Source: Bugula neritina (taxonomy: Eukaryota > Animalia > Bryozoa). From it: DNA of 64,000 nt. Under the pieces are notes generated by a model. The model was not told the origin of the DNA, did not search any database, and was given only the letters and a program-made list of their open reading frames with translations. The stretch spans positions 28,040,628 through 28,104,627 of the forward strand of contig OZ037767.1 of assembly GCA_964035545.1 (NCBI GenBank), in the 5' to 3' direction. A program made the position numbers and the translations under genes. Shown here in pieces: positions 6,217-61,026 of the stretch (position 1 is the stretch's first letter; each line of letters opens with the position of its first letter).

Positions 6217-7682
6217 ATGCCTCTTTTCAGTAAAGAACCAACTGTGAAAGGTTTGTAAATATTGCTTGAATGTTGAATTGCTTACATTAGCTCACTAGTA
6301 TAAGGTAAATATTTAGTTGGTTTGACAATCAATATGAAATATATTATAGAGCAGTTGAAGTCTCAAGACAGAACATTGCGTAAAGTTGACCGAGACTTGG
6401 CTAGAGATAGAAGTGGGTTAGAGCGACAAGAAAAGTTGCTGGTGGGTTTATTAAATAATAAAATAACGACTGGTTGTCATTGTGTTTTGATCAGATAGCT
6501 TGTTCAATTGTGGTTTTAATTTTTGATAAGAATTCAAAAAAAGATCCCAGTATTGCGAACTAAAGTGAAAAAACATTTTGTTTGTAGGAGCAACAAATAA
6601 AACAGGCAGCCAAAAGGGGAGACAAGCAGTCATGCACTATTTTAGCAAAACAATTAGTTAACCTAAGGAAAACTAGAACAAAATCTGTAGCTACTGGGGC
6701 TAGAATTCAGGCTATTGGTAACCAAAGTAAGGTTATGAACTCTAACATGAAAATGGCGGAAGCTATGGGAACAACAACTAAGGTATGAAATTAAATTATT
6801 GCAGAATATAAAATAAAAGGAATTGGACTTGTGGTACTTTTTCATTTCATCTTAGCCTATTTGAAGTAGATATATTGGCAAGTTGTGGTACAGATGAACG
6901 TGGTATAAATATAAAGGCATATTTACTACTATTAGCTCGTGCCTTGTTTTAGCAGTTAGTCTTGATGGTATATTAAGAGCTGTTGGAGAAGTAATAGTGT
7001 AATATTTTACAGACAATGCAACAAATGAATAAGGTGATGGATCCACAGAAAATGGCCGCACAGATGAACGAGTTTACCAAACAAAATGCAAAACTGGAAA
7101 TGACAGAAGAAATGAGTAAGTTAGTTTATGTGAAGATATTATAGCGTTATGATATACATACGCACGTCACAATGAATAGTTCTGCTGAAACAAAGGCTTG
7201 CTGCTGACAGTATCTAGACAGCATTAGCAGCAGATTTAGTACTAATGCTCCCGTCACTGTTGGAAAGTGGTACTAATGGAGTTTCTCAACAACATTTAAT
7301 TGATAGTGATTTTTAATTTGTTTTAGTAAATGACACACTAGATGAAATGTTGGATGAATCTGGTGATGAAGAAGAACAAGATTCAATTGTTGCAGGAGTG
7401 TTGGACGAAATTGGTATTGATATTTCAGGAAAGGTTAGTACACCAGTTCAATTTAGGCAGCAAAAATTTTTGATTTGGCCACATGAAAATGACTAGTGAC
7501 TGGTTTATGCTTGTGAAAAGCAACTTAAATGCTAATTTTATTTTGTTCAGTATATAATACATGGCTATGTGCTTTAGGTGGCAGAAGCCCCCTCCGCTCA
7601 TAGAGGTACAATTGGAGCTGAGGCTTCAGGATTCACAGATGATGATTTAGAGAGGCAATTGAAAGCTCTAAAAACAATGTAG
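6217..7682 (+). CDS. CHMP2B: Charged multivesicular body protein 2B (ESCRT-III), 6 coding exons, 211 aa
   Basis: join 6217-6250, 6350-6441, 6588-6782, 7013-7115, 7327-7433, 7578-7682. Motifs: LAKQLVNLRK, KVMNSNMKMAEAMGTTTK, KLEMTEEMINDTLD, VLDEIGIDISGK, C-terminal DDDLERQLKAL (MIM1-like). Confidence 0.93.
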
Positions 7683-8232
7683 TCGCTGTATATAATTAAA
7701 TTTTGAAATGATTATTTAAGATATGTATTTTTATTGGTAACTATTATTAGTTGTATTTCTGCAAGTATTGTATCTATTCACCAAACAAACCTGCTTTTGC
7801 GTCTAGCTTCATTTTACAAGCCTTTAAATTTGATCTTATAACTCAATTGTATTGTATAAATACTGCTAACTTGTTTGAAATCATAAAAATTATTTTTTGA
7901 TGAAACGTACTTTCAAAATATATTATTATATATATTTGTATTGCAAAACTTTCGAAAAAATTTTATTCCAAAACTGTTATGCCATGTCAATGAAGCATAA
8001 TCATAATATAAAATTAATCTATTCAACAGATTAAAAAAAATTAATCAGTATCTCAATTTTGTATTAAAGATACACTGCCTATAACCTATTTTATTCACGG
8101 CTCCTGAATTCAGTTTGCTTATATCAGAACATACAGCTTGCCAATTTCTAGTTGTTTCATAAATTCCAAGACCATCTTCCAGCTACCAAAGCTGTTCCTA
8201 ACCTCAGTTAGTGTTCCCTATCACCAGAGTTC

Positions 8233-11200: not shown

Positions 11201-11550
11201 TGACCAGGTGGCAGACTAGATATAAAACATGCCAGTAGAACACGTCTTATTTAGCAATGCAAAGCTAAAGGCACTCAATTATTAGTTATTGTTTTTCATA
11301 CAATATTTTAGACAAAACTCAAAACATCAGGAAACCACTCAGTCAACCAATACATTCTGATTCTCATAAGTCAAACCTTAGATACAAATAATAATATAAG
11401 TATGATATGATGCTAAAATGAATGAGCTAATATTCAATAGGATTTAAATGCGATACTAAGATGATTGACAAACCGTAAAATAAAATGCTGCTCCATATCA
11501 AACTGATCATCTTTACGCCTTGCATCTGTTTGCTTCCCTTTACTAGTCAT
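8233..11550 (-). CDS. TAF7: TFIID subunit TAF7, 7 coding exons, 329 aa
   Basis: complement(join 8233-8358, 8967-9131, 9485-9621, 9750-9941, 10268-10421, 11077-11215, 11474-11550). Motifs: EQHFILRLPP, KLVDLPCIIETLKTTDNKTFYKTADISQML, HGITPPLKNVRRRRFRKT, IEKEVKRLL. Confidence 0.95.
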
Positions 11551-13201: not shown

Positions 13202-16200
13202 ATGAAAAGAACTCGAGGAAATTCAGAAACGGTAAGACTAAAATTTAAAATGTGTCAAACTTTAATTTGAAGTGTCTTCTGCCTGTATTTCTGTTGCAAA
13301 TTTATTATTTTCGATCTCTAAGACTAAAAAAAGTTTCAGTCTAAACTTGTCACAGAATATGCATAATTACAATATAAATCTGAATGCTAATGTCTATTAT
13401 GAAAATGACCTAATTAGAGATCTTCATTGTTATTTTAGCTCTTAATATATTCAGATAAATGATAGTCATAATAATATATGCAGCTAATGAAATCCAGGTA
13501 TATGTTTTATTTAGGCCCCCCCCCCACCGTCAGGTTTATTTATCAGATAATGAGCAGGTCTTCGATATTTTTGATACATTTTTTTGGACTGTAAAAAGCT
13601 TTCAATAGCTTGCAATTGTATTACTTTATATTGATTAGATATACAATACAGTAAGTCAAGTCAATTGTCTTCATGATCAATGATTAAATTTTATTAGGAA
13701 AGTGAACAGACAGAGGGGGATGCAGGGTTAGTAGCACCCACTGGTGCACAAGATGGGGGTGATGTTGGAATTGCTGCTGGCAAGAAAAATGGAGCTGGGT
13801 CTACAAGCTATACTGGAAAATTTTGTAAACCTGGCTACAAGTTTTCTGAGACCTTTAAGGTGAGTATTTTGTATAAGAAATATGCGGACATACCATACTT
13901 TAGACAAAGCCTTGTGTTAGAAATAACTGACAATTTTTCTCTATTCTTAGGAGGATCATGGTGACAATTTGTTTGCTATACAATTTCATCAGCAAAGCAA
14001 AGATCAGGCTATTTTCGCAACAGCTGGTGCCAACCGACTCTCTATTTACGAATGCCTTTATCCTACTGGTATGTTTTCCTTTAGCTCATTTAGTAGTGTT
14101 CATTCTACTCAAATGATGGTAAATAATAAGCAATCTTTATTAACCCTTACATCAATAGACCATATATGTCCCTCAAAGCGACACTATCCACAGATCAATG
14201 GACCATATATGGTCTTTTACGTATATAAACAACAGCGTATATAAACAATAGCGCTTACTTTAAACTTCCAGTTTTCAACCGGAAAGCCTAAAAGTTTTTG
14301 TAATTGATGTTGATGGTGCAGCTTAGTAATTTTGGGATAATTATAGCCATTAAATTTGATTAAATGAATAGCTACCAAGCCAGCTATTTGTTTTTTAATT
14401 TAATCCCTAAACTTCAAAATCATCGCTAAATTTTAACGCTACTTTCAAATGCAAGAAACTGCTGTCAAATTATATAGAGCCAGTTTAATTTATTCAGATT
14501 ACATTTAGAAGAACATATAAATAAGCAGAAATGTTAAAGTCACTATATTTTGAATCATATTATAAATTAATTTTATCATTTTGAATTTTCAATTTTAAAA
14601 TGGCGGTTTTGAGAGGTCAAATTAAAATGACGATTTTAGCTAGAATTAAGTTCTCCCGTCACTTTAAGAAGCTTTTTATAATAGAAAATACTCTTAAAAT
14701 TATACTACCCAGTTTATTTAAGGCCAAAATCAAGTGTAACTTTTTAATAATAAAATTGAAACTTGTGCAAAATCTGTTAGCAAATTTCGCGATAAACTCA
14801 AACGAGGCATAAAATTACGTAACTTCAAAGTTGATCGCGAAAGGGTTAAATCATTTGTGAAAATATTTTCTGGTATTACATGTAGATATGCTGTTGTGGA
14901 ACAAGATGCTATGATATACTTACAGGCATCAGGTTACTGAGAATGTACGCTGACCCTGCCGTAGATGAATGTTTTTACTCATTGGCCTGGTCTTACTATG
15001 ACGGGTGTATACCTGTGGTTGCTGTTGCTGGCAAAAATGCAATAATTAGACTGATATATCCGACCAATCCAGGGTACAGTTCAGATGAGCTTGTAAGTTG
15101 TCTTTACTCATTCTTTCATACAGTGTAGTCTTTGCAATATCATTTGCCATGATGTTTGTTTGTTTGTTTGGTTTATTTCATCAAAGGTATTTAATAACAC
15201 AAGGACATTAGAAAATGCCAAGGAGGCGATGATGAGGCCCATTGCGCTATAGCCTAGCTAGTCATGCGCGGGCCAACACGAGCTGACAGCGACTCTATCC
15301 AGAAAAATACAAAAAAAAAAAAAATACAACTATTGTCTAGTTAAGCTTTAGGTCTATTATGATAAAACATACCATGTGACTAGTTATGTGTACTTGTTAT
15401 ATGCACTTGTGTTGAAAAATAATGTTTAACTGTCATGTGCTCATTTTCTATATGTGCCGTGTTTAAATGAATTGAAAATCTATCATTATAGTCATACACT
15501 GGACATGGCCATGCGATCAATCATCTAACATTCAATCATACCAAGCCTCACATTCTTCTCTCTGCCAGTAAAGATCACGATATGAGACTATGGAATATTA
15601 GGACACACACTTGTCTCGCTATATTAGGCGGAGTGGAAGGTCACACGGATGAAGTTCTTTATGCTGTGAGTTCAACAAACCATGTGCTCTTCTGCAGTCT
15701 CTATTCAAGTATGTCTCTTGTATTGCATCACACGACTAACATAGGACAGCCATCACTGGACAAATGGTACAGTCATATTGCATAATACAAACAACATGTG
15801 ATTTCGAAAATTCTCTACACATTATTTCCATGTCCTTTAGTCAATACTGCATAGTTATTAGTGAACAGTCACTACTGTCTAGTCACTACTGTATAGTCAC
15901 TATTGTATAGTCACACTACTGTCTAGTCACTACTGTATAGTCACACTACTGCCTAGTCACACTACTGTATAGTCACTACTCTATAGTCACACTACTGTCT
16001 AGTCACTACTCTATAGTCACACTACTCTGTAGTCACACTACTGTATAGTCACTACTGTCTAGTCACTACTGTATAGTCACACTACTGTATAGTCACACTA
16101 CTCTATAGTCACTACTCTATAGTCACACTATTGTATAGTCACACTACTGTCTAGTCACACTACTGTCTAGTCACACTACTGTCTAGTCACTCTACTGTCT

Positions 16201-18334
16201 GGTCACTACTGCATAGCCACACTACTGTATATAGCCACACTACTGCTTAGTCACTGCTACCAGCCATCACTTCCAAACCTAATTGGTTTCAAGATTTTTG
16301 CTATTTATTTATTTTCAGTGCTTACTAAGTAATCATAACATGAATTACTAGCAAAGGATTGTATTTTAATTTCTAAAGGACTACTGGTCTCCTACCAGAT
16401 GCTGAATAAACTATTGTCTTTCAATAGAGTGGGAGCCTTATGTTGTCTATTGTATTAGATTCACTAAGTATAGCAACCATCTGGTGTAATGAAAAGAAGT
16501 TACACTTCTTATGTTCATTCGTTCATAGTTTAATGCATCCTATCCATCATTGTGGTAACATTGTTCCAGAGAGACTATGCTAAATCTGTTGTTTAGTTTA
16601 CATAAAGCTTTATCTCATCTCTACATGCCGTGGTAGGAATTTAGTCTGGATGGCAACAGGATTGTATCATGTGCAATGGACCATTACTTGAAACTGTGGA
16701 ATTTAGACAAGCCCAAGATGAAGGCAGCTATAGAGAATTCCTCTAAACATAGTCACAAGTCCAAAGTGTATGTCTTCTTACCTTCTGCTATTTTATGAGG
16801 TAGCTTGTGTTCTAGATTAAAAATGTAGCAAAAAAGTTAGGTTTTCGGAAAGGTTTCAACTTACGCCCCAAACCAAAATCTATAAAAAAAATTGAAGAAC
16901 TTAAGCTTTTCTCAATTTCTCCACTACTGCAGCTAAATGCATTTTATCTGTGTAATTAATATACTCAGACTGTGAAGTCTTTTGATTTTTTGTCACTGAA
17001 AGAGTCGAATTTATATTGCAGGTCTTTCCCGGTTCATAGAGATCATTTCCCAGTATTTTCTACACGTGACATTCACAACAATTACATCGATTGTGTCTTG
17101 GATTTTGGGAAGTTTATCATCTCCAAATCTTGTGAGAATGAGGTGGTTATTTGGAAGCCAGGACCTAGTGGTGTACAGGTAAGTTTACTGCTGTCTACCT
17201 ATATCTCATTGTGCAACCTATAGACATACTATGTGTTTGCATAATACATGTGCCCTCCTATAGAGACTTTTTTGCCGTACTGCATATCAAAGTCTGGTGA
17301 GGTTTTTGTATTGTATACTCTGTTTCCTTTATACAATTGGTATTTTCTTGATATTTTCAGCCCAAATCAAGCAGCAAGAACTGCGTAACTGTTGTAACTC
17401 GACTACCTGTAAAAAATGCTGATATCTGGTTTCTGAGAATCAGTCTAGATCGCATGAAGAAGAATATGGCACTTGGAAATCTTATCGGGAAAATATACCT
17501 GTGGGACTTGGATGTAGATGATCACAGAAAGATAAGGTAAGTCTCATTTGTGTTTAACTCTTTCAGTATTTCGTTTTGTATATAAGATAAGTTTTGTTGC
17601 GTTACTAATAACTTTTATGTAATGATAGTACTGCAGAATATTGTATTCTATTCTAAAAATAATTACATGGCGCTGCATTAAAACTAGTACAAAGGAATAA
17701 AATCTGCATATTTAATCATGGTGACATAACCATATTACTTATTTCCCAAATGTTATCTTGGTTTTTGATAGACTGGTTTTCCAAATTTTGAAATATTAGT
17801 TGAGATTTTTTTTTATAAAACCATTACTATGCGCTGGTTATACACTAGTTATACTTACATAAATAAAGAGTTATAAATCCTACTTTGTGTTTCATTTAGC
17901 CGTAAGATACTTCTCATCTGTGAAGTTCTTCCCCTGAAAACAGGCCAATTTATATAAAATTTTATATGTATTTTTCAACTGTTCATAATGGAGAAATATG
18001 TGTAAAAATGGTGAAAAAATTTGATTAGTCCAAATCTTAAACCTTAACTTTCATTACTGTTAAATGTTACTCAACTCATTTGAATAAATGGAATGATAAT
18101 TAAACTAGAGAAAATGTATGAGCCATAAATATGTGTTTTCTCTCTGCATGCTCTAGCTAGTTGTCTACTGAGGTCTTCTGCTTTTGCAGGCCGTCTATAC
18201 TGCAGCACCCAGCTTGTACCACTGCTGTTAGACAGACCTCATTCAGTCCTGACAGTAAGACCTTAATAGCCTGCTGTGATGATGGAACTGTATGGAGATG
18301 GGACCTCATTCAATCAGCTAAAGCCGACCCCTAG
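13202..18334 (+). CDS. EED: Polycomb EED/esc, copy 1 (closer to canonical), 9 coding exons, 419 aa
   Basis: join 13202-13231, 13698-13859, 13951-14068, 14926-15092, 15492-15665, 16637-16767, 17022-17178, 17361-17536, 18190-18334. Motifs: [79 protein letters not shown]. Cage positions are F/Y/W/F. The first exon is the least certain. Confidence 0.93.
14144..14845. mobile_element. Non-autonomous piggyBac-like element in EED copy 1 intron 3
   Basis: TTAA|CCCTT (14140-14148) and AAGGG|TTAA (14841-14849); internal GACCATATATG repeats. The paralogous intron of copy 2 is 137 bp against 857 bp here. Confidence 0.7.
15149..15334 (-). mobile_element. 3'-UTR-only copy of the same LINE in EED copy 1 intron 4
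   Basis: Matches 49899-50073 except for one extra TTTG unit and a longer A run; ends 2 nt past the ORF2 stop codon. Confidence 0.95.
15865..16260. repeat. 16-18 bp minisatellite (ACTACTGTATAGTCAC-like) in EED copy 1 intron 5
   Basis: Direct tandem units visible. Confidence 0.9.
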
Positions 18335-19053
18335 ACACTTGGGTAACTAGTGTACAGCAGCTCCATGGCTATTCTAGAGTGCATTACGTCTTGTTGTTAT
18401 TGTTTTGTTGACGTAAACTGACTCTAGGTATTATATGCACTAACCTCATGACTCTTTTATTAGTCTAGCATTATATTGCTGGATTAACTGTTTACATGTT
18501 TACACAATTTGTTCTCACCATCTTTGCTGTAAAATTCTTTCTTTAGTACTGTTGATAATATATTAACTTCTCTCTGTTGTTTATACCAAATAAATGGAAA
18601 TTTAAAACTGGTTAACTTCTGCACCCTTATTGTTTTACATACCTCTCATACCAACTCTATCCTCTCAGAATAGTTTTACATGTTTTCTGATCAAGTTTGA
18701 CTGGTCCTTCCGATCCATTCATTCATAGATAGAATATGTCTAAAATTCACGGAAGTCTCGTCCTCATGAGTATCAGTTCCATGGTACTCGGGCTTTAATG
18801 TTACGTAGCAAAATTAGATGTGCTGTATTTTAAGTTTTAGCCAAATCTCAATAGAAATAGCTCTAATCTAACTTGCATGGCTTCGATAAACAGCTTGTTA
18901 TGTGGCTGTATTTTGATCTCTATTAAAAAGCAGTTTTTGTTTATAAGCTGCTATATGTGTATTGAGTATTAGAAAAGCTGAAACCCATTTGAGTTTGAGA
19001 TGTTGGCAAGTTTCTACTGACCATTCACTAGACTTCACCTGTATCGAGTAGAA

Positions 19054-22000
19054 ATGGTGAGTGTATAGATCATATTTTCACTTTCTAGTTACTAGTAGGT
19101 AACTTGATATTTTATACAGTTCTCACATAATCTATTGATTATTCACTAGACTTCACCTGCATTAATTATTTTTTGTCGCTTGATTTAATGGCTAACTTTA
19201 AAATTTAAAAACTTTGAAAATATTTCCCTAATTTTTTTATATGAGCAGCTCCTTAACTTGCCTCTATCACATCAATATTATAATTTACATATCTTACATC
19301 ATACATTTCAAAAATGGTTTTTCAAAGTGATTGTAGGCCTATCATGTGTGTAAACTTGCCGCATTGTTCTACAATCTATGTAAATTGGTAATATGGGAAT
19401 ATTTGTAGCTCATTATCACGTAGTTTTGTAATTTACTTTTGCTTTTAGGAAGAGGAAGTACAAGGCGCAACAGCCGCTTCACCAGAAGCTGTGCCAGAGG
19501 TGAGAGAGTTTCTCTACTTTTAGTTCTATTACCTTTTTGGATCTTAAATATTTTTACCCCCTAACTTATAATTACAATGTGTGTTGCTTATATCTTTCCA
19601 AGTCATCAACAGTTTGTCCTCTTGAAAGATTCTTCAAAGAACAGAGCAGCATATACAAGTATGCATACCGGCAGATAGTCTGACGTTTGCCGTCTCTTTT
19701 TTAGGATGTGGGCATTGAAAATCTAGTGACCAGTCTGACCAGGGATTTCACTCGAGTTTCAGTAACAGACCCTGAGTCTGTAAGTCCTACAATACTTAAA
19801 TTTTTGCATAACTTTTGTGACACAATTACTGTAATGCTTAGTATAACCTCTGTACTGACAGCAAATACTCTGTTACTTTGCAGGAGTCTGAAACTTCAAG
19901 TACTCAGGGCTTGTCACCTGAAAACAGAGAAATGCCAGCTGAGACACCTGGTGCCAGTAAAAGATCCCATCAGACCTGTCATAAATACAGCAGTTCCATA
20001 CCCAACAGCAGATACTCTGATATTACTGTAAGTTGGCTCATAGAATGAAGATTGTAAGATACGTTAATAAAACACAGTTCAAGTAATGACAGCAATAATT
20101 TTTTTGCATGTGAAAAATATTTATAGTTGTTTGTAAGATATATTTTGAATTTAATTATTGTTTATTAAGTGTTACTGCTAACAAATATTCTGTTACTTTG
20201 CAGGCGTCTGAAACGTCAAGTACTCAGGGCTTGTCACCTGAAAACAGAGAAATGCCAGCTAAGAGACCTGGTGCCAGTAAAAGATCCCATCAGACCTGTC
20301 ATAAATACAGCAGTTCCATACCCAACAGCAAATACTCTGATATTACTGTAAGTTGGATCATATAATGAAGATTATAAGATTTGTTACAGCTCAAGTAATG
20401 ACAAACAAGAATTTGTTTTCATGTGAAAAGATACTTATAGTTGTTTGTAAGATATATTTTGACTTTAACTATAGTTTATTAGGTTGCATAAATGATTAAC
20501 TTGTATTAATATATGCATGTATGTATTACCATAAAATTTCAAATATAAGAGTGTATTTACATAAACTTCCAGCTTTATCTTTTGCAGCTGTATTTAAAAG
20601 TCAGCATTTTTAAATTTGAGAGCAAAATTGCAAATCAAACTAAAAGTTGCTGCCCTACCTTTGTTTTTTACAAGACATGATAAAGATTATGATGCATGAA
20701 AAGTGTTTCATTCAAAGTCACAAAATCGTCGTCTGCTTCTAAAAACAGTGCTAACCCTGACAAGAGTAAATGCGACCTTGCCTTGTATATTTTATGTTTT
20801 TACAGGACGATGATGACCTAGAGAGAAGTATTTTACCTAAAATCGAAAAGATTTCTTCTGTAAGTGATACTATTGATCTTTCAACTGGTATCAGCTTAAG
20901 TAATACCGAATCCGATCAAAAAAATGTAAGTATCGCAAAACAATAATATTAAGTTAATGTTCATTAGGTTATTGGTAATCTGTTTTGACAATGAATTAAT
21001 ATGTTTCACTCAGGCATTAAGCGAATTGTTAATATTGTGAATATAAGTTATTCCAAGCACTCTTAAATATGGCCAACTCAGTATTACCACAACTCTTACT
21101 GAGAAATAAGTCAGTTGCAGTCTCAATGTTTTCTCTGATTCTGGTTGTATCAATAAAATCTGTTGACTATTCACAAGAAGGAAATTGCTGAAAAGTGTGC
21201 AGATCTGACTGCCTTGTCTCCAGCTTCTATAACAACTGTGTGTGTCTTTTAAATCTACATTTCAAAACCACGAGAAATTTGTTCAAAAACTAGAGTGGCA
21301 CAATGAGTAATTTTGTGTTTAAAAAACCTTGCATGTTTATGGTCTGTTCAGTATATTAGTTTATTTTATTTTTGTCATATTATGTTTTAATGTTCCCCTC
21401 AATAATAAGTATTATTGAGAGGAACATGATATGACAAAATTCTACTAAATGCTAGTACTAGTACTTTATTTTGATTAGCCATACAACGCACTTTTGACTT
21501 TGTGGTGAATAACTTTATGTTTTATTAGAAAAGGGAACGTGCAAAAGCAGCAACTGTGTCATCCGCGTCGCTCGCTGCTCTAGATGAAGCTGACGCTGGA
21601 GCGTGCAGACGCAGGAGAATCGAAGCCTGGTCTTCGAGCATCTCAGAAGATGTTTGTGACCCCCGCTATGAATTTTCTGGTACCTTAAAAGTGAGTAAAT
21701 TGGGTAAAAAATATGTGAACATATCATATTTTGAATAACCTTTTATGCTGAAATATACTGGCTACGTTTTTCTAATTATAGGAAGATCATGGTGGCAATT
21801 TGTTTGCTATACAGTTTCATCAGCAAAACAAAAATCAGGCTATTTTCGCAACAGCTGGTGCCAATCGACTCTCTATTTATGAATGCCTTTATCCTACTGG
21901 TATGTTTTCCTTTAGCTCATTTAGTAGTGTTCATTCTACTCGACACATAAAAAACTGATATCTGCTTAATTTATTTTTCTGTTGTATAATATGTAGATAT

Positions 22001-24711
22001 GCTGTTGTGGAATGAAATGCTATGACATACTTACAGGCATCAAGTTACTGAGAATGTACGCTGACTCTGAAAATGAAAGCTTTTACTCATTGGCTTGGTC
22101 TTACACTTCGGAAGGTATACCTGTGGTTGCTGTTGCTGGCAAAAATGCAATAATTAGACTGATATATCCGACCAATCCAGGGTACAGTTCAGATAAGACC
22201 GTAAGTTGTCTTCTTTACTCATTACTTAATGGTAAAGTGTTTCATCATCATGCTTGTTCAAGTTTAGCCCAACTTAATGTGAGTGAGTGTGATATAAGAC
22301 CATCATCTGTGAGTGAGTGTGATATAATGCATTATTTAACAGTTATAATTTGACTGAATAAATAACGTGATAATTGTACGCATACATGTACAATTTCAAA
22401 GTGATTTCATATACTCACATTCTATTTGCTCTGCGTTTTTATCATTTAGATATTTATTATTACAGTCATACACTGGACATGGCTACGCTATCCATCATCT
22501 AACATTCTGCGGAACTAAGCCTTACCTTCTTCTCTCTGCCAGTAGAGATCACGATATGAGACTATGGAACATTGAAACACACATTTGTCTCGCTATATTA
22601 GGTGGGGTCAAAGGTCACCAAGCTCAAGCTCTGTATGCTGTGAGTTGAACAAAACATGAGTTCTTTTACAGTTTCTATTCACAACTGAATGTGTAGTTTC
22701 ACATTACTCTGATAATAGCAATTATTAACATGATTTCACTGAGAACTTTAGTTTATGTTATAGTATACCCATAGCATTATATATACATCTAAATCTCAAC
22801 ATACTAATTTAGCATGTATGACATGTTAGGTATTGCATCTATATCTTCACCAAGTAACTCTTTCATTTTTAATTAGGAGTTTAATCTGGATGGAAGCAGG
22901 ATTGTATCATGTGGCAAGGATCATTCTCTCAAGCTGTGGAATCTAGACAAACCCAAAATGCAAGAAGCTATAGAAAATTCCTCCAAGTATAGTTACAAGT
23001 CCCAAAAGTAGGCTTCATCTTCTGCTTTTTACATATGAGAATAGAATTTGAAAAAGTTCACATCTAAACAATCAAATATTTGTTTGTGACAATGTCACAA
23101 CTATATTTTTTAGTTAATGACCACCTATAATCTATATATAATATCCAAGTATTTCCCAATACTTTTCCTTAATTGGAATTTTCTGCTACATGTGAACTTT
23201 TTTAAATATAATATCTTGATTAGTTTGATCATACTCCTTCTTTAATTTAATCTAGAGTGTAACTTAGTCCAGCACACCATAAATGGGATATTTTATACTC
23301 TTTATTTTGGGGTTTGCAGGTCCTTTCCAATTTATAGAGATCATAATCCAGTATTTTCTACAATTGAAATTCACCAAACCTATGCCGATTGCGTCTTGGA
23401 TTTTGGAAAGTTTATCATCTCCAAATCTTGTGAGAATGAGGTGGTTATTTGGAGGCCTGGACATGATGGCTTAGTGGTTAGTTTCATTACGTCTATAATG
23501 CGTGCGCACATGTAGTCTACATATTCCTACATGCTATGCATTTTTATTACGACCAGTAAATTTTCTTTAAATTACCAGGCCAGATCAAGCAAAAAGAACC
23601 CTGTAACTGTTGTAACTCGACTACCTGTAAGAAATGCTGACATACACTTTCTGAGGGTCAGTCTAGATCGCATGAAGAAGAATATGGCACTTGGAAATCG
23701 GATTGGCAAAATATACCTGTGGGACTTGGATGTAGATGATCACAGGAAGATAAAGTAAGGCTCATTTATGTTCAGAGCAGGGTGTGTTGAGTTACAATGA
23801 GATATGTCTGTACTGCTGTAAATGATATATATATGTATCCCTAACAAGCTCATAGCGTATATTTTCATAGTTTTACTGCTAAAATTAAAGATTTTACTAA
23901 ATAAATAAATTTTCTAAAATATCGGTTCTGCAAAAGCCAAATTGAGACTTGATTTTATCAATTTCTTATTTATAAGAATGGTGTAAGATTTTTACAAGAA
24001 GTAATAAATAATACTTACTTAACGTATTTATTGATTTTGTAGACTAATTTTAGTACAGCTACATATGTATCAGAAATGTTTAAAGTTGCAGAATACACTA
24101 CATACAGGGTTATAGAATGAAAACAACTTCATCAATTCTAAGTCCTATGACAGGGCTTTTCCCTTTTACAGGCTATTAAATATTTTTCTGATTGTTTTAA
24201 CATTGGCTGAGCATGAAAGCCGAGAAATGTGATACGATAATCTTGGCACATGGACTGTAACATTATTCACAAATGGAATTGATAGAAACAGAATTAAAGA
24301 TGATATATTATATCTTTTGCCTACAATTATATGCAAATGATAATGAAAAGTATAAATGAATAAAAGATCTAAAAATCATTGCACATTTCATCAATTATAG
24401 AATTTTATAACTTAATGTGCACTGGATACATCAAAATATGCTTTTTCTTTCCCATATGCATTTTTTACACTGGAGAAAAATAAAGGAACCTACCATAAAT
24501 TTTAGCTTTAGAAATTATAGTTTCCATGCACAGGTTACTGTCACAGGATTTCTTCTGCTTTTGCAGGCCGTCTATACTGCAGCACCCAGCTTGTACCACA
24601 GCTGTTAGACAGACCTCATTCAGTCCTGACAGTAAGACCTTAATAGCCTGCTGTGATGATGGAACTGTATGGAGATGGGACCTCATTCAATCAGCTAAAG
24701 CCGACCCCTAG
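19054..24711 (+). CDS. EED: EED/esc-like tandem paralog (copy 2) with extended N-terminus and altered top face, about 587 aa
   Basis: Exons 21529-21690, 21782-21899, 22037-22200, 22466-22639, 22877-23007, 23320-23476, 23579-23754 and 24567-24711 match copy 1 in phase and length, apart from one in-frame 3-nt deletion; no stops. Predicted upstream phase-0 exons, lower confidence: 19054-19056 (ATG), 19449-19499, 19705-19779, 19884-20027, 20204-20347, 20806-20925 and possibly 21181-21237. Confidence 0.88.
19840..20480 (+). repeat. 320-bp tandem duplication, each unit holding a 144-nt phase-0 exon
   Basis: 19884-20027 and 20204-20347 are nearly identical, and the flanking intron sequence is also similar. 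Confidence 0.93.
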
Positions 24712-26331
24712 ACACTTGGGTAACTAGTGTACAGCAGCTCCATGGCTATTCTAGAGTGCATTACGTCCTGTTGTTATTGTTATGTTGACGTGAACTGACT
24801 CTAGGTGTTATATTGTCAAAGAAATGACACACTTACCTCATGACTATATAATATGTTTTCAAATTTTACTTCTTGTAACAAGCATGTTTATACTGTTGAT
24901 ACTAAATCCCATAATTTCTATTTGATATAGCAGATAAAATGCCTCACTCTACTATATAAATATACTTCTTTTGTTCTCTATACACCTTCTCTACCCCCTC
25001 CTTTCTGTAACATATACTATATTCAACATATATACATCATTTATACAACATATCATATACATCATATAATAATATGCAACATATATACATCATATACATA
25101 TCAGAGACCATCTGCAACCATCTGGTTATGGCTACAGCCAAAGTTCTGGTCTTATAATGTACCAGAGTTAAAAAGTTATATTTTCCTAGCAATTCTAATT
25201 CTGAACATTGCTTGAAAGTTTTGTACAGTCCAGGGTTTTTTCCGTAGCAAAAGTGACTTTAACTTTCTGTAACTTCCTAACTAACTGTTATCAAGTTTAA
25301 AATGACCTCCCATCCATATCTGGCCGTCTAGCAGTTTAGATTCAATCATATTAAAGAGAATAGCCAAAGTACACAGAAGCACCATACGCAGTTTTATGGT
25401 ACTGCAGTTTCAGTGTTATGAAGCAAGAAAACCTCAACTACATTTCAGCTGTAGGCAACTCCCAATATAAGAACAATTGTATTAAAATTACCAATATATG
25501 GCTATACGTAGTTGGTAATCTACTTTTAGAATGAGACGTAGGTAGGTTTGTAGTATTCACTTCTATTGAGTAGAAGTGGTAGGTATTTCAGCTTTCTAGT
25601 AGATAAATGTCTTATTTCCAGTTTGCAAACAGAGTTCATTATCAGAGCGGTTTATCTATTAAAATGATTCAAGTAAAATCAATTGGCAGTATTACAGTTG
25701 GAATTTGAACACGACCTCTACAGTTCTCAAAGATCTGAGGCTTGCTTATAGCAGGATACGGTTTATTGTAAAAATTGGAATGAAGAAACTGGTTCTACGA
25801 TAAAACAACAGAATGAAATATCTAAAGTGATAGAAGATGTTGATTGTCTAAATTTAGCACAGAGTATATGTACATACTAAAACATACAAAAAATCTCACC
25901 AAATGCAGTAAATTTCCTTACACTGCAATCATAAAAGAAAGACGGCATACATCGCAATGTAAATAATATCAAACTTAAAATGTAAATCTAAAAAACTAAA
26001 TAAGTCAACTAAAACTATGGGAACCAAAATAATTTATAGAGATTTTTTTTTGTAATAGTACTTAAGTTTTCATAACAATAAAAATGAAGAATTAATACAG
26101 AATATTTGAAAAATACTTACAAATAAAATTAAAAAACACTTTTACAAAAATTGATTGTAAAGAATAAACAGGGAGGAAAATACTTACTATAGTAATATGT
26201 AATATATGGTTTGAAAATAATTATAGGTTGAAATAAGTAAATTTTGTACCAAGAGCAAGTCAATTTATAGCCAGATTATTGTCTCTAATAAATGATTGTA
26301 AAGGTAAGAATGCATGCGTAGCACCACTTCG

Positions 26332-29300
26332 TTAAACGCTGCTTTGATCAACAGAAGTTACCATCGAAGAAGAGCTGTGATTTTTCCGATGAGGTAAAAT
26401 TCTGCTGGCATCAGTGCAGATGTAAGGACACAGCAAACAGTGAAAATGAGAGGATTTGCTGCTGAACTCGCAATCTATTCGGCCACATTCACTTCGCTGT
26501 TTGTAGAGTTTGAAATCGTCTCCCATTATTTTATCTACAATTAAACATTGCATCAAATTGTTTAGTATAAAAATCAATTCATTAAAAAAAAACTAAGAGT
26601 TTGATCAGGACTTGATAAAGTACATCAGCAAATTTTGAAAGTTTTTATGCATCTAAAATGTCTACATAGATACACACCAAGTTTTTCATGTCGCTTAGTA
26701 TGTTGGGGGAGTTTTGATTGTTCCACAACGCTGTAGGTGCACTCGGCCCTCAGGCAATGGTAGTGATCACTAATCATGCAGTGCACACACTTTGCATAGC
26801 CACAGTCCTTGGCCTTAGAGAACTTCTTGTACATGCTGTGATGAATTGTAGCAGAATCTGTTTCTTCATCTGGAGCTGAGTCTATGGCACTGCTCTCTCC
26901 TTCCTAAAAACAACAGTTACTTTGTGTTTATAAATAAGTTTGGCATTGCCAGAGCACACTGAATAACAGCACAGCAGAAAGACTTGTACCAAAAAAAGAC
27001 ATGGAGTATTTAGAGCTTGTGCTTTACTTATAATCCCAACATAGATGTAAACAGTCTAACATAAAAGTGACAAGAATATCTTAGTGATACCAAGCTTAAT
27101 AACTAAATGCAGAATATAAATCCGATTCTTTAAACATCAACTTATTAACAATACTGACATACTTATGACATCTTACAAGATGGTGAAAAAATTTACGGGA
27201 GAGTGAGATATATTACGATATAGTGAGAGAGATTACGAGAGAGTGAGAGATATTATGTGATAGTGAGAGATATAATGAGATAATGAGAGAGATTACGAGA
27301 TTATGAGAGAGATTACGAGACGATAAGAGAGGTATACCTCTCTATCAGACAGAATAATGTTCTGGTTGGTGCTCTGGGAAGGCTCGGTAGCCTCACTCTC
27401 AACACCATTGACCATCTGCAACTGCAAGGCTTTCATCATAGCTTCTGGAACATTCTTTGAAGAAGTGGAAGGAGTTGTCTGCCCATCTGTACTACTATCG
27501 GGTACCTCTGCATTCCGACGTGGGGTTTTCTGAGCTACTGAAGTGTTCTCAACTAAAAATAACAACACACCATAAACAAAAACTAGATCAATACTCCATT
27601 AATTGAACAGTAACCCATGTGACAAAATTTCAGCACAATATTCACGCATAATATAAAATATGTTCCCGTATCTCAGAAATGTATTTAAATGAGATTACCT
27701 GCAGCTGCAGCAGACATGTTTTGCTGTGCTGCAATGGCTTCCATGAACTTAGCTATAGACTGTGGTTGAGTTGCCTGAGTGAACTGACTCCCATTGTTAC
27801 CTGGTAACATCGAATCAGCAGAACCAGAACTGCCGAGTCTGTTGACGTACTTCCTGTGTTTAGACATGTGCAGCTTCAGGCCGGCTTCATTGTTCTGAAA
27901 AACAAACAGTTATTAAGTTAAATCTGAATCCCTTTCAATAGAATTAGCAACATCACAGAAAGAAAATTCCTGGACAAAACAAGAACATTTTGAAAACAGC
28001 AGTAATTCTGTGACACTTGTGGAGTTCTACCTGGTTGAACGCAGTTCCACATTCCAGACAATGATAGTGCTCAATCTGCTTCTTCTTACAGAACACGTTA
28101 CTGCATGGCAGCTCGGGAGATGCATACATCCTTCCCAGCATCCTTTGCCAAGTAGCATCCTGCAGAATCAATGTGAGTGTATTCTTGTAGCATTACCGCC
28201 TCATTAACCTATCATATGTATTGTGACTATCTCACTAACCTATCACATGTACTGTAACTATCTGACTAACCTACCACATGTACTATAACTATCTTACCTG
28301 CACTGTAACCAAGGGGCTTTCTTCTTTCGCCTGTAACATCTGCTGCTGCTGTTGAAGTTGTGCTGCCGCAATAGACTTTTGGTGCAAGACTAACATCTGA
28401 GTCAGCATGTTAAGCATGGTTGAAGCTTGAGAATTCTGAGCACCTAACCCATCTACTACAGAATTACTCGGGGGCGGTATAGGAGTCACCCCAACTGCTG
28501 CGGGAGACATAGTCTGTTGATCACCAGCACTGCTTGAAACTTCAGAAGAATCGTCATGGTTATCCACTTCTCTATCTGCAGTAGCCACACCACAAGCGTT
28601 TGACACACTCGAAGAAGGTAATGGTGCTAGAGCACAGAAATTTAAACATTTGACAGCGCAAGACCAATTATATACAAATAAAATCTAATAATAGATATCC
28701 TTGACTACAAGATAAAATATTTCACTCACTTTCAAGTTTTCCTGATTGTGGGAAGAAGGTTCCAGAAGCCTTTACAGTTCTGTTAGAGTTGTTCATATTG
28801 ACTAGGGCACTGAGGCTATGTGGGTCATCGTCCCGATCCAATGAACGAATATTGATTTCCTGTTTGATTAGAGGACTCTCTGTCATGCTGGGCACATCGT
28901 TAGCATGTGGACTCGGAACAGTGGCATTAGCTAGATGGGGCGCTGTGCTTGGCACCCCCATTCTCTGCAATAATAACACCAGAGTCAAGTCTGATTATAA
29001 AAGATAAAGAAAGCCTGAATTAGGTTAGTGATTGGGATAATACAAAGTAGTTTCAACTGCCAACTAAGAGAAATGCATTAACGAAGCAAAAATATTAAAC
29101 AATATTGCAAGAAATAAAAATATAGCAGGTGATGTAGTTTCACACACAATTGACTCATAAGTAGTCGTACCAGGAGTGGAGGTTTGGGGGGTAGTTTAGC
29201 ATTGAGCTCATCTTCGGCATGCCGTTTGTCATGCTGCGCGACCGTCGTGTGCCGCATGAATGAGTGATGACAACCTGGGCGCAGACAGTGATAGTGACAC

Positions 29301-32300
29301 GAGTTGCGGTTATTGCTGCAGTTAACACCTCTGCAGTTTACATTCCGATCAAAGTATGCATAATCTGCAAAACAAGAGAGGACAACTTAAAATATTTCAA
29401 AAGAATTTTAATGTTGCAGAAAACATACATTATTCCAAATATACTACTACATTAATTATAGGATATTAGTGTGATAGCAACACTAACCAATGAATTCAAC
29501 AAAGAAATTTAACTCAAGTGTTTCAGAAACTTTATAATTATAATGTTCTATTTATACATACATACATACATACAGCCATACATACATACAGTGAAACATA
29601 CATACAGTCATACCTACACATCTACAGTCATACTTAGTGTAATACGTACATACATAGTCACACATACAGTGGCACATACCTACACTAAATCTAATGCATA
29701 CTCGTCAGTGTTTACACATGTGTAGTCACATATATATGCATCATACTACTAAAGCAATATCATGAATTATTTTGTCTCCTGAAACAGCGTGACTTACTTT
29801 CAGGTATGACTACAAAGTTATGAAAGTTAACGCTGTGAGCATGCATGACGTCAAGTCGGTTGGTGGACGTGTGACAGCGGGGACTGTTACAGTGGTAATG
29901 AGATTCTCGTCGGAACTTGCACAGTTCGTCTGCACATGGCCGACTGATGCTGAAGTTACTGTAGCTCCTGTCAACAAACAAAACAGCATGCAAAATATCT
30001 TAGCAAACCAATTCTGTTGACAAACGATAAAAATAGACTTGTAAGTGAACGCTGCAATAACTAATAGGAACTGTAAATACTAGACATCAAGTAGAGTGCT
30101 AGACGTCAAGTATGATTTAGACACAAATGACAAAAAGTTTGCCATTGTGAGGAAACTCGTATACTTTATGAATTGAAATGAACATTCAACTAGGAACAGT
30201 TGCAACTCAACAAACGTTATGAATCTCACACTTTGGAGTCCTGCGCGGCAAGATTTTTCTGCAGTTGGTCTCCGAAACCACGGTCATCAGAGCATATCTG
30301 AGGAAAAGCTGTTGCAATCTTTGGAGGTCGTCCTCTCTTTTTATTGGCTAATTTAGAGGTAAGAGCCACTTGTGAGCCTCGTTTACCAGTAGCCTGGCTC
30401 ACTCGAGATTCAAACTCATGTTCTTGGAAATGGTCAAGTCTGGCAAAGATATCATCTTCCAAGGCTATAGTTTTACTGCATCCCATCTAGAAATACAAAA
30501 GAAGACATTGCTTATGTATACGACTTGCACCGGCTTGTATCAGCTAGCACATCTAGCCTACTGTAAATATACTGAAAGACAAGTGAAAAAGTCAACTCTA
30601 TTGCATACAGTTACTATTGCATCTAGTAAAGCAATACAAGCAGTATTAGTTGAAAGAGTTTGAGTCTAAAGCGTGGGAATACAGGAAACAGGAGTTACCT
30701 ACCCATTTACAATGGAAATGAGTTGACACTTCAGTGAACGAACAGCCTTCCACTGAGCATTGCTGGCCCTCGGGACAAGTTAAAAAGAGCTGTTCGGTGA
30801 TTTTCTCTTGATTGTCGTGCAACCTGGCGTGGTCTCTTACACCGTCTTTGTTTTTGAATGCATTAAAGCACCGATCAACATTGCAGTGGTAGTGATCTTT
30901 GTAGAGGAGCCAGCATCGTGGATTGCATGGATCGTTAGCTGTATACCTAAAACCAACTCAATATTATGTAACAAACTGTATAATTGCTCATCTCAACATA
31001 TTTTTGTAAAAAATAGTTTCCTATTTAATCACAGCTATTAGTGAGTAAATTACTTTGCAATGCACTATTGATAATGATAATGTTTAGTTATGCGGTAAAG
31101 TTTACAGTAACATGTTTATGTACTTTTAACAGGGTTATTGACTATCAATTCCGGTCACCAATGCTACAGTCAATTACTTTAGTTCCCCAGTTCTACAGTA
31201 TATCAGATAGACTGTAGTACTATTGAACATTAGTGATTAACCGTAGTACTGGTGAACTAAGGTGATCAACTGTAGTACTAATGAGCTACAGACCTTGTAA
31301 GATACTTTTTCCAGAGTTCTGATTGTTTTTCTGTGCTTTTGCCAGATGTTTCCCGATCAGCACCGCTTTTAGCCAAGGCTCCAGGGGAAGACGACTGCTC
31401 GCCAGGAGTTATTCTGAAGTGCCCCATCATACTCTTAGCCTGGTTATTTAGCCTCTTGTTCTTCTCTGTTTTCCAGTTTATGGCAGCGGGTTGGAGCACC
31501 CGCCCTGGAGTTAGGTTGAGAGATTTATCAAATACCTGCTCAGCAGAACTCTCACTCACTGCATCACTGAGCAGCTCATCCGTAACTGAACATGGAAAAA
31601 AATGAAAACTTTCTAAATTAATTGCAACAATAAACCCATCAGAGCAACATCCTTTCAAACATGTAACATGAGTTTGCTCAGAAGACGACAATAATGTTGG
31701 TTGAAAGATCCGTAACAATTAAATACTATTTTATAAGTTTCAATATTTTAAACAAATATTTTGCTTCTAAATTACATTTCAATCAATAAAATACAAAATA
31801 TTTGCCATTTCAAATATAAGTTTTACTACACCATCGACAAAATAATTAAGAGCTGAACATTGAAGCAGACTAGTGTTAAAATGTTATGATAATGTTGTCT
31901 TTGTATTGACAGGCTCAAAATTCAAATTTATGCAGAAGGGAATCTTTGCATGCTTACCATCATTCGCTGTAATAGCAGCGGCAGCAGCAGCAGCAGCAGG
32001 TGTTTCCTGTTTTACTGAAGAAGTAGCTGGGGTTGACGTAGCAACAGGTAGAGTTGGGATGAATGGGTTGATGGGGGGTGCACCGCCAGCCTTCATACCA
32101 GACATCAGATTTATTCCTTGGGAGAGTCGGGCTACGGTTGAGAGGAGATCTGATGCTGTAAGAATACAGATGTCTATGTGAATACAGATGTCTATGTGCA
32201 TACAGAGGTATGTGTATACAGATGTCTATGTGAATACAAATGCCTATGTACATACAGATGTCTATGCACATACAGATGTCTATGTGTATTCAGATATCTC

Positions 32301-35300
32301 TGTGTATAGAAATGTCTATGTGCATATTGATGTCTATGGAAGCACAAACCAGACTCTTCCAACATATGAGAATAAAAACGCACAGCATAAATAAAATCTC
32401 GAAAATGCATCAATTCAACAAGTTTCCATAAGTCCATGAGCTAGCTAAAAATGATTACAACACTGTGTAAGTGTCATAATAATAAATTGTAAACAATGTA
32501 TGTATTGTTGTAGGCAGCTAACATATCTGAGACGTGACCTTACATTCAAGCTTAGCAATATTATTACTGTCTAAAATCAACTTTGTACAAAACTTGATTC
32601 AACTTAATCTACACAGACATTGGCACCAAGTCTTTAATAAATGTGAGGATTATGTGAAGTGGTGGAATACCAGTGGTGGCGGAGGCAGACATTTGCTGTG
32701 GCTCCAGGCTGTTCAGGGTAGCAGCGGTAGATGGAGAGACATACTGCGCTGCCAAGGCAGCTGCTCCTTTAAGAGTCTGCTGCAAGGTTTCGCTGACAGA
32801 GGTGCCAGGGTAGGCGGCCTGGTCAGACTCCTTCTTCTCGTGCTTGCGTTTGTGTGGGTAGAGCTGACTGGTGGAGTGGAGGACGTACTGACACCCTGGT
32901 CGCATGCAGTGAATGTGGTTACTCAACTACAACAGTAATAGCAATGTCATGTGACTAGCATACCAACTATTCGAAAGAGTAAGACAACTCCAATAAATAG
33001 AGGGCAACTGGAAGTTCGTAAAGGAAGTAGTTTATGTAAGTAAGTTGTATACATGAATATCTGGTATATTATATTATCAGATCATATTTACACTAAACCG
33101 TAGGTAAAGTGGGGATAATAGGAAAAAGCTAAGGTGACTTCAATATTCAATTTTTTTGTTAAATTCAATTTTAAAATATAACAATCAGTATTTTTTATTT
33201 TAAAAGAAACTACCAATCTATTACTATTTAAAATAAGAATGTCATGAACAAAAATAAAATTTTAAAATTACATATACAAAGTTGAACAATAAAAGTAGCC
33301 TACCTTTGAATAGGCACAACCATTGTATGGACAATGTTCGTACTTCATGTATTTTTTGAACCCATCTTTGGCCAGGATTTCATCCTTTTGGTGATAGGTC
33401 TTGTGCTTTTCTATATAGTAATATAGTAGTATTATAGTACTATGAGTAATATAGTAATGTGAGTAATACAGTAATATGAGTAATGCAATATATGGTAGTA
33501 TTAGTAATATAACATATAGTAATATTTCAAGAAAGTGATAACAGCTGAAGCAATCAATAGGCTTCATAAATTAAAATAATATTGACAAAATAATTAAGAA
33601 AAATAAAATGATCTTCAAATAAATGATAAACTACTCTCACCCATATCGGCTTTGTTTTTAAAAGTGAAGTTGCATGCCGGTCTCCTACAATGAAAATGAG
33701 TGGTTCTTTGGTTGTAAAAGTCACAGTTAGGAGTCCCACAGTCTTCCGTCGCTCGGAATCTTTGAAAGCCCTCCATGATGATAGCAGACGCCTTCCTATG
33801 GTAGTTGGCGTGCATTTGGACATCAGACGTGCTGACATACACCTTGTTACAGCCAGCCTACAGCACACAGCCCATGTATTTATCACAATTTTACAGTAAA
33901 ATAACTTTAGATGGTCTAACCAAATACTATATAATTATATGGAAAGTTATTCATACAATTACTAGTAACAGTGTACAGCAAAAAATCATCACAGCTATAA
34001 GAGGCTGTGTCAGTTTAGTTGGTTACAAATCATAGACTTAGAACTTTTATAACTCACCTCATTCTGAATAGTTCAAAACAAATGTCCTAAAGTTACAAAA
34101 CGTAACACAAGTTGGAACACAATTCTATGCCATCATATACAGGTTACAGAAGTTGTCTTACCTGTATACAGTGATAGTGTGTTTGTTTGTTGTTGTGAGC
34201 ACACGGCCCAAACTTAGACGTGCAGTCATCGAATGGACTGTACCTCATGAAGCCATGCTGCAGGGAATCCTCTCTCTTCTTGTGCCACTTGTAATGTCTT
34301 ATCATCTCTTCCTTCTTCACTATGATCTGTCACAGTTAATTAATACCATGCAACTCAGCAATAACTAGCAGAGTGCGTCACAACTACACTCCTCAATATG
34401 ACATTTCTATGTGTGGATGACTCAATGTTTACAGTTCCTTCTCGTTGCTAAGCTGACAAATATTGTAAACAAAAAAAATAAACCAACACCTATTATCTTA
34501 TAGCATCATTTAGGATAAAATATTTTCTGTTACACATGATTAAGCGTGTAAGCAAATGTGATGGAATGCCAACTAATGAATTCAAATCTGAAACAGTGAA
34601 CCACTCTTAAACCTGAACTCAAAAAAGAATACGCAGTTTACTTCTAGATCTACAGCAGTCCCAAAATAAAAGTCCAAATAAAATAACTTTTCTTCACAGT
34701 TTTTGGCTGCAAAGTGTTAATTCTAGAGGTTTCAAGCAGCCAACCTATACAACTACATCTTACACCTGTATATGTTTTGGGCCGTTTTGTCCCAGCCAAT
34801 TAAAACTTGTCTACATAGATGTACACAGTGCGTTAGGAAGACCTACCCTTGAAGGACAGTCAAGGCAGTGGAAATGCTCCCGGTAGTTCATACCCATACA
34901 GTAGGAGGAGCCACATTGCTGAGCGCTGGTGTACCGAGTGAGATATTTACTATGATCCAGGGGCTTCTTCGGCTTCCCACTTCCACCACTAGCACCTGTC
35001 ATCAGACAGAATATCAGTAACTCACACCCCCAGCAAACTATATCAGCCTCCACCACTAGCAGTCTCCCAAATCCAACCTTTCACCACAAAGAGTTGCACC
35101 AGCTGAGTAGTTAAGAGCATCTCTCAACACCACATAAACAATACATGACTTTCCACTAATTAGGGATATTTACCAACTTGTCTGGAATAGAAATAAGTGG
35201 TTATTTATTACAACAAATTCATGTCAACACAACTCCATATATTCTATATGTATCAATATAACAGTTGAAAAGTTCATAACCTATTATTTTTAAAAATATG

Positions 35301-47169: not shown

Positions 47170-47230
<61 letters not shown>

Positions 47231-54136: not shown

Positions 54137-54339
<203 letters not shown>

Positions 54340-60981: not shown

Positions 60982-61012
<31 letters not shown>

Positions 61013-61026
61013 CACTACTACTACTA

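What the first reader, a model, noticed from the sequence alone, without database searches (positions are those of the whole stretch)
21782..24711. Intact EED paralog with a remodelled H3K27me3-reading face: candidate variant or decoy PRC2 subunit
Seen in sequence: copy 2 has an open frame and canonical splice sites in all WD40 exons, but many of its differences from copy 1 fall in the top-face loops. These are [11 protein letters not shown]>[18 protein letters not shown]>GHGYAIHH, SKD>[11 protein letters not shown]>VKGHQAQA, CAMDHY>CGKDHS (AAG at 22916-22918), [10 protein letters not shown]>STIEIHQTYA, ADIWF>ADIHF (CAC at 23645-23647) and GNL>GNR. Established knowledge (human numbering, aligned from memory): F97, Y148, W364 and Y365 line the methyl-lysine pocket, so copy 2 is W364H. 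M256K equals the Drosophila esc M236K dominant-negative allele, reported to assemble into PRC2 with low methyltransferase activity. RDE236-238 is the ESC RDE216 patch implicated in E(z) binding. N194, R236 and R302 are Cohen-Gibson syndrome sites. Inference: several such sites changing together in a maintained gene, with loss of acidic residues at 233-238, suggests a natural PRC2 attenuator, a PRC2 uncoupled from H3K27me3 read-write feedback, or a propeller with a new ligand.
Basis: partly seen in the sequence, partly recalled or inferred. Interest (0 to 1): 0.9.

Follow-up and report, generated by a model that had tools for sequence, protein, structure and literature searches.

The report
Bryozoan EED copy lacking feedback sites
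A moss animal (Bugula) keeps a second, spliced copy of the Polycomb subunit EED in which seven of the eight residues mutated in the human overgrowth disorder Cohen-Gibson syndrome have been changed and then held fixed, which suggests a natural version of the gene-silencing complex PRC2 that no longer spreads its own mark; no function has been tested.

Summary
Real. The window (Bugula neritina species complex) holds two tandem EED genes; the genome has one EZH and one SUZ12. Copy 2 is intact and longer than reported: ATG at 19054, an acidic leader of about 233 aa, then the propeller. RNA contigs of a sister lineage splice it, at low depth. That lineage (GCA_010799875.2, about 11% intron divergence) keeps the open frame and all top-face changes of exons 3-6. 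Copy 1 and outgroup bryozoans are ancestral. Copy 2 gained N194H, K211R, E233K, D237A, E238Q, V239A, M256K, R302I, D303E, N307T and W364H, each seen in at most 1 of 120 animal EEDs, while WD40 core residues, F97, Y148, F365 and most of the EZH-binding bottom groove stayed. Seven of eight Cohen-Gibson positions changed. dN/dS: 0.35-0.8 on its stem, 0.15 since the split, no amino-acid change in 60 top-face codons. Corrections: R236, S259 and Q382 already differ in all bryozoan EEDs, and the YADSENES change is mostly lineage-private. Best reading: a PRC2 subunit uncoupled from H3K27me3 activation (0.45); a re-tooled binding face is the main rival. Not found elsewhere in this scan or in the literature searched. 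No biochemistry.

The parts
13202..18334 (+). EED copy 1 (ancestral type), 9 exons, 419 aa
   Evidence: 351/355 identical to B. neritina KAF6035704.1 core; its model folds as EED, TM 0.9
19054..19056 (+). copy 2 start codon, directly before a GT donor; first in-frame ATG after upstream stops
   Evidence: RNA contig joint 19057 to 19447; same ATG-GT in sister lineage; start is inferred
19449..19499 (+). leader exon 1 (17 aa, acidic); exon and upstream intron related to a cassette of a DUF1771/Smr-type gene array on contig C2
   Evidence: 82% DNA match, alignment, Pfam hint, splice joint
19705..19779 (+). leader exon 2 (25 aa)
   Evidence: joints; intact in L005
19884..20027 (+). leader exon 3a (48 aa, Ser/Thr-rich)
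   Evidence: only two copies in the genome
20204..20347 (+). leader exon 3b, tandem duplicate of 3a; inclusion not resolved
   Evidence: 89% identical repeat; two copies also in L005
20806..20925 (+). leader exon 4 (40 aa, acidic)
   Evidence: RNA contig piece 20806-20925; single copy
21529..21690 (+). diverged homolog of copy 1 exon 2 (both 162 nt, 91/162 identical)
21782..21899 (+). propeller exon 1, F97 kept; partly homogenised with copy 1
22037..22200 (+). propeller exon 2, Y148 kept; one-codon deletion private to this lineage
22466..22639 (+). propeller exon 3: N194H, K211R, E233K, T236Q, D237A, E238Q, V239A; identical protein in the sister lineage
22877..23007 (+). propeller exon 4: M256K, Y259S, H258 kept
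23320..23476 (+). propeller exon 5: F296N, R302I, D303E, N306Q, N307T, I309A; Y308, D310 kept
23579..23754 (+). propeller exon 6: W364H, L382R; F365, R367 kept
24567..24813 (+). last exon (stop 24709-24711) plus about 100 nt of 3' UTR, 98% identical to copy 1: gene-conversion tract, present in both lineages

Best explanation
Copy 2 is a maintained, lineage-restricted EED paralog that still folds as a seven-bladed propeller and still binds the N-terminal helix of the single EZH on its bottom face, but has lost the H3K27me3-to-EZH activation route on its top face (cage wall W364, pocket rim N194/K211/E238/M256, SRM anchor R302 and neighbours). PRC2 built on it would assemble and keep basal activity but not be stimulated by its own product, so in cells that express it, it would compete with copy 1 for EZH and limit spreading of H3K27me3. 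Shown: gene structure, splicing of the leader and exons 2-4, conservation, direction and position of the changes. Inferred: protein production, entry into PRC2, loss of binding and of activation.
For: Intact ortholog with all exon 3-6 top-face changes in a sister lineage. dN/dS 0.15 since the split, below 1 at p about 1e-5. 33 fixed changes derived on copy 2 against 6 on copy 1. W364, R302, N194, D237, E238, V239, M256, N307 are invariant in 120 of 120 animal EEDs. All 15 WD structural residues checked are kept; of 13 bottom-groove residues named in PMC8404197 only position 336 is a fixed difference between the copies. Human R302G/S assemble, keep basal activity and lose activation (10.1101/206383); W364A restores EZH2 levels but binds H3K27me3 poorly (PMC6876280); ESC M236K lowers activity (PMC3914023). 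Seven of the eight positions in a Cohen-Gibson patient table (PMC13635803) changed: p 6e-6 among all sites, 5e-4 within the top face; dN/dS on those codons 11-20, p at most 4e-4. One EZH with its SAL/SRM segment recognisable.
Against: No binding, activity or protein data. A merely dead surface should drift, yet 60 top-face codons show 0 amino-acid and 4 silent differences between lineages, which fits a new positive function at least as well. F97, Y148, F365, D310, R367, R414 are kept, so some methyl-lysine binding may remain. Bryozoan EED already departs from human at R236, S259, R306, Q382 and EZH at H129, so human allele effects may not transfer. Contig depth is about 10 against about 300 for copy 1 in one whole-sample run, and copy 2 joints for the last three introns were not seen.
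Confidence: 0.45

Rival explanations
1. Re-tooled reader: the top face was selected to bind a new ligand (another mark, an acidic partner, or the protein's own acidic leader), inside or outside PRC2.
For: New residues are frozen since the split: 0 amino-acid changes in 19 diverged top-face codons where about 5 are expected if neutral, P 0.005; multi-base codon changes and dN/dS above 1 on the clinical codons; top-face net charge moves from -11 to -5 while the leader carries -11; exons 3-6 resisted the conversion that homogenised exons 1 and 7.
Against: The changes concentrate on exactly the residues whose loss blocks activation in humans; no candidate ligand or co-duplicated EZH/SUZ12 was found; the leader evolves fast (pN 0.085, pS 0.136). 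Those 19 codons also show no silent change, so the test has little internal control.
Confidence: 0.3
2. Ordinary young duplicate: constraint relaxed after duplication, the copy is now a weakly expressed, partly redundant EED with near-normal or simply reduced function.
For: Stem dN/dS 0.35-0.8 is not different from 1 and not above 1 for the whole gene or the whole top face; post-split dN/dS (0.15) is higher than copy 1's (0.02), p 0.03; rice OsFIE1 is a precedent (10.1101/714444).
Against: Relaxation would hit core and surface alike, but structural invariants were spared and the clinical positions were hit beyond the neutral rate; the top face is now under strong constraint.
Confidence: 0.12
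3. Ligand-independent (constitutively primed) EED: the changes hold the EZH SRM in place without a peptide.
For: The changes cluster at the SRM-facing surface; S259 returned to the animal consensus.
Against: R302 substitutions in human remove the SRM anchor and lower activity; no structural support could be computed.
Confidence: 0.07
4. Copy 2 is only transcribed by read-through from copy 1 and makes little or no protein.
For: One RNA contig runs from copy 1 exons 5-7 through its 3' UTR into the copy 2 leader; low depth; intron-retaining contigs; many upstream ATGs.
Against: Purifying selection on amino acids and 13 conserved in-frame exons in two lineages need a translated product; contigs merge overlapping transcripts.
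Confidence: 0.06

Closest known systems
EED/ESC (core PRC2 WD40 subunit)
   Same: Same exon series as copy 1, best solved-structure matches are human EED, WD40 core and F97/Y148/F365 kept, 158/345 identical to a vertebrate EED.
   Different: W364, R302, N194, D237, E238, V239, M256, N307 changed (invariant in 120 animal EEDs); 21 departures at 70 near-invariant columns against 11 for copy 1 and at most 4 for other animals; new leader of about 233 aa.
Drosophila ESC / ESCL
   Same: Two EED paralogs in one animal, used as alternative PRC2 subunits.
   Different: ESC and ESCL diverged little and differ mainly in expression (PMC5240099); dipteran esc and escl proteins in my set keep all these sites.
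Rice OsFIE1 / OsFIE2
   Same: Young EED-family duplicate with a newly evolved N-terminal tail and weaker purifying selection (10.1101/714444).
   Different: OsFIE1-PRC2 is reported to retain H3K27me3 activity; no loss of cage or anchor residues is described in the abstract read.
Drosophila obscura-group Caf1-55dup
   Same: DNA-level duplicate of a WD40 PRC2 subunit with asymmetric, episodic selection (PMC5240099).
   Different: Different subunit (RBBP4/7 type); no link to the allosteric axis.
Human Cohen-Gibson / Weaver-like EED alleles and engineered cage mutants
   Same: Same positions: 194, 236, 237, 302, 306, 307, 364.
   Different: Single heterozygous disease alleles, against seven positions changed together in a conserved extra gene with a normal copy beside it.
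EZHIP / H3K27M (from own knowledge)
   Same: Would likewise limit H3K27me3 spreading.
   Different: They block the EZH2 active site in trans; this would act as a replacement subunit. No sequence relation.

Membership tests
EED/ESC family | Homology and exon structure of EED | tested here: met
EED/ESC family | Seven-bladed WD40 propeller | tested here: inconclusive
   Copy 1 ortholog P0158 folds as EED (pLDDT 90, TM 0.9); copy 2 keeps the structural residues but was not folded because the joined model is not to be submitted
EED/ESC family | Complete aromatic cage F97, Y148, W364, Y/F365 | tested here: not met
   W364H; the other three kept
EED/ESC family | SRM-anchoring residues (R302, H258, R236, S259) | tested here: not met
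   R302I, 236 is Q (T in copy 1); H258 and S259 present
EED/ESC family | Bottom groove for the EZH EBD helix | tested here: inconclusive
   12 of 13 listed positions equal copy 1 in this genome, but many differ from human in both copies, and the sister copy 2 has two further changes
EED/ESC family | Assembles into PRC2 and supports methyltransferase activity | not testable with these tools
   needs reconstitution
EED/ESC family | Binds H3K27me3 and activates EZH | not testable with these tools
   predicted lost by analogy with human mutants
Pseudogene | Disabling lesions or dN/dS near 1, no splicing | tested here: not met
Assembly artefact (haplotig) | Near-identical copy absent from other assemblies | tested here: not met
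   Copies 78-87% identical in six exons; both present in tandem on VXIV02000842.1

The most novel reading that the evidence does not exclude
Bugula evolved, by positive selection, a dedicated feedback-off EED subunit that combines most of the human Cohen-Gibson positions in one protein and is used in particular cells to build PRC2 that can seed but not spread H3K27me3, a natural regulator of PRC2 of a kind not described (subunit swap rather than active-site inhibitor).
Probability: 0.35. Interest if true: 0.85.

Novelty: new variant of a known kind. Interest (0 to 1): 0.68.

Why it matters
The H3K27me3 read-write loop through EED is thought to underlie spreading and inheritance of Polycomb silencing, and the residues involved were invariant in all 120 animal EEDs sampled. 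Known EED paralogs differ mainly in expression. A conserved natural paralog that changed seven of the eight positions mutated in Cohen-Gibson patients gives a ready pair of proteins (copy 1, copy 2, one EZH) to test whether animals can regulate PRC2 by swapping in a non-stimulable reader subunit, or what else an EED top face can be made to bind. Limits: one genus-level lineage, a non-model animal, low apparent expression, no functional data.

Tried and rejected
Pseudogene and haplotig readings rejected. Fusion of copy 1 and copy 2 into one double propeller rejected: copy 1 has its stop in both lineages. A co-duplicated EZH or SUZ12 was not found (the weak PF11616 hit lies elsewhere and was not followed). 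The representative-protein search with one exon was swamped by multi-WD40 proteins. Exon searches found no copy-2-type sequence outside the B. neritina complex, but these see only short fragments, and outgroup contigs are too short to show that other bryozoans lack a second copy. Whole-gene and whole-top-face tests for dN/dS above 1 were not significant. Leader exons 2-4 have no Pfam, Atlas or own-genome relatives. The primary ESC and Margueron papers were not held. No paper on Bugula Polycomb genes was found.
Full report
Organism and layout. The window comes from a 216 Mb animal genome. Its nearest named relative is the bryozoan Bugula neritina: an exon search returned the annotated fragment KAF6035703.1, and contig VXIV02000842.1 of GCA_010799875.2 carries the same gene order. 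Introns differ by about 11%, so the two are sister lineages of the B. neritina complex (inference). Two EED genes lie in tandem on the + strand between TAF7 and CASZ1. The genome holds exactly two EED copies, one EZH and one SUZ12 by the searches run.

Observation. Copy 2's seven propeller exons have canonical ends, join in frame, and give 293 of 354 residues identical to copy 1. Human numbering was checked against the full-length EED chain in 6c23 and a vertebrate EED.

Copy 2 begins at an ATG at 19054-19056 followed by a donor, then six phase-0 exons that give an acidic, Ser-rich leader of 233 aa (185 if one of the two repeated exons is skipped), for 587 aa in all. The last leader exon is the diverged homolog of copy 1 exon 2. 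The first, with its upstream intron, is related to a cassette of a DUF1771/Smr-type array on another chromosome. Contigs of one public RNA run splice the leader exons to each other and to the propeller, and join propeller exons 2-3 and 3-4 with copy 2 letters. The variants shown match the sister lineage. Depth is about 10-13 against 294-356 for copy 1, a poor but suggestive measure. Copy 2 joints for the last three introns were not seen, and one contig bridges copy 1's 3' UTR and the leader, so the start site is unresolved.

Conservation and direction. In the sister lineage all 13 exons keep splice sites and frame, exon 3 is identical in protein, and every top-face change in exons 3-6 is shared. 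EED exons from five other presumed bryozoan sources are all of the copy 1 type. Of 49 fixed differences, 33 are derived on copy 2, 6 on copy 1, 10 ambiguous. Against 120 animal EEDs (biased to the best hits, mostly arthropods), W364, R302, N194, D237, E238, V239, M256 and N307 are invariant, and K211, E233, D303 nearly so. Copy 2 changed them all, and kept the WD structural residues, F97, Y148, F365, H258, Y308, D310, R367 and R414.

Where the changes fall. With the top face defined from WD40 geometry, 18 of 60 top-face against 13 of 151 other positions changed (p 0.0002), and 6 of 12 canonical hot-spot positions (p 0.003). An independent list, the EED variants in a Cohen-Gibson patient table (PMC13635803), names eight positions; seven changed in copy 2 relative to copy 1 (p 6e-6 overall, about 5e-4 within top-face or near-invariant sites). 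Two of the seven (236, 306) were already non-human in bryozoans.

Selection. Exons 1 and 7 and part of the 3' UTR show gene conversion; exons 3-6 group by paralog at 88 informative sites against 3 by species. On exons 3-6 a codon model written here gives dN/dS 0.013 in outgroups, 0.02 for copy 1 and 0.15 for copy 2 since the lineage split (below 1, p about 1e-5), and 0.35-0.8 on the copy 2 stem, depending on how silent changes are shared between stems (outgroups are saturated). The whole top face is not significantly above 1 (0.6-1.2). The eight clinical codons are (11-20, p 4e-4 in the conservative case), but they are few and several are multi-base changes, which inflate such tests. Since the split the 60 top-face codons show no amino-acid change and 4 silent ones, where about 17 are expected if neutral. 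The pattern is a burst after duplication followed by renewed constraint.

Mechanism. In human PRC2, F97, Y148, W364 and Y365 form the cage (PMC7000746, PMC6484020); N194, K211 and E238 line the pocket (PMC8404197); R302 anchors the EZH2 SRM, and R302G/S complexes assemble with normal basal activity but lose stimulation (10.1101/206383); W364A restores EZH2 levels but binds H3K27me3 poorly (PMC6876280); ESC M236K and V289M, spaced like 256 and 309, lower activity (PMC3914023). The bottom groove for the EZH helix is nearly the same in both copies and the single EZH keeps a recognisable SAL/SRM. The simplest reading is an EED that enters PRC2 but cannot be switched on by H3K27me3 (0.45). The frozen state of the new residues and the shift in surface charge from -11 to -5 argue that the face may also bind something new (0.3); the two are not exclusive. 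Relaxed redundancy (0.12), a primed form (0.07) and an untranslated read-through (0.06) fit less well. All functional steps are inference.

R236, S259, R306 and Q382 already differ from human in all bryozoan EEDs sampled; G255 and S259 in copy 2 equal the animal consensus; F365 is the common invertebrate state; most of the exon 2 change is private to this lineage. The dominant-negative and RDE216 statements could not be checked.

Comparison. By descent it is an EED; it fails two defining sequence features of a canonical EED (complete cage, R302 anchor). ESC/ESCL differ mainly in expression, rice OsFIE1 is a young duplicate with a new N-terminal tail but retained activity, and Caf1-55dup is a selected duplicate of another subunit. 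Distant, divergent EED paralogs of other animals were not sampled, so similar cases may exist.

Method note. Spliced models were searched exon by exon by reference; the joined copy 2 protein was neither searched nor folded. Only the database protein of copy 1 (P0158) was folded.

Verdict. Real, conserved, spliced, previously unannotated (the reference annotates only a 75-aa fragment). New variant of a known kind; interest 0.68.

Noticed in passing
window 18190-18436 and 24567-24813: Last exon plus about 100-150 nt of 3' UTR is 98% identical between the paralogs in both lineages, and exon 1 carries species-specific residues shared by both copies: ongoing gene conversion at both ends, sparing exons 3-6.
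   Followed up: yes
L024:5054-5218 (G000:C3:3741053-3741217): The single EZH has R at human H129, while all sampled bryozoan EEDs have T or M at R236 (R236T is a human patient allele); possibly a compensating pair at the SRM interface.
   Followed up: partly
window 13698-13859; L027:10307-10468: Copy 1 exon 2 has a GT donor here but GA in the B. neritina reference, whose annotated protein skips the exon.
   Followed up: partly
L027:14509-15822; G000:C2:27788100-27789100: The sister lineage has two extra acidic micro-exons (36 and 51 nt) in the copy 2 leader, on a 0.9 kb segment 83% identical to a DUF1771/Smr-type gene array on C2; the RNA contig length fits their inclusion. Absent from the window.
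   Followed up: partly
L005:2550-6929: A 4.4 kb Gypsy-type LTR retrotransposon sits in a copy 2 leader intron of the B. neritina reference; absent from the window. Observed only.
   Followed up: no
window 50072-52954 (-) and 15157-15334: A 961-aa open LINE ORF (endonuclease plus RT); a 178-bp piece 96% identical to its 3' flank sits in a copy 1 intron and is absent from the sister lineage: a recent truncated insertion.
   Followed up: partly
L003 (G000:C88:5609-8770): Intronless RACK1-like gene on a small AT-rich contig, probably from a non-host eukaryote in the assembly.
   Followed up: no
window 1500-11300, 26300-39200, 46700-64000: Neighbours: prefoldin subunit, Snf7/CHMP2B-type, TAF7 (Pfam), CASZ1, an LRR gene, and a CFAP47-like gene (resemblance from memory). 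TAF7-EED linkage is also seen in outgroup L014.
   Followed up: partly
window 18334-19056: One RNA contig is continuous from copy 1 exon 5 through its 3' UTR into the copy 2 leader: the copy 2 start site lies within copy 1's 3' UTR, or read-through occurs.
   Followed up: partly
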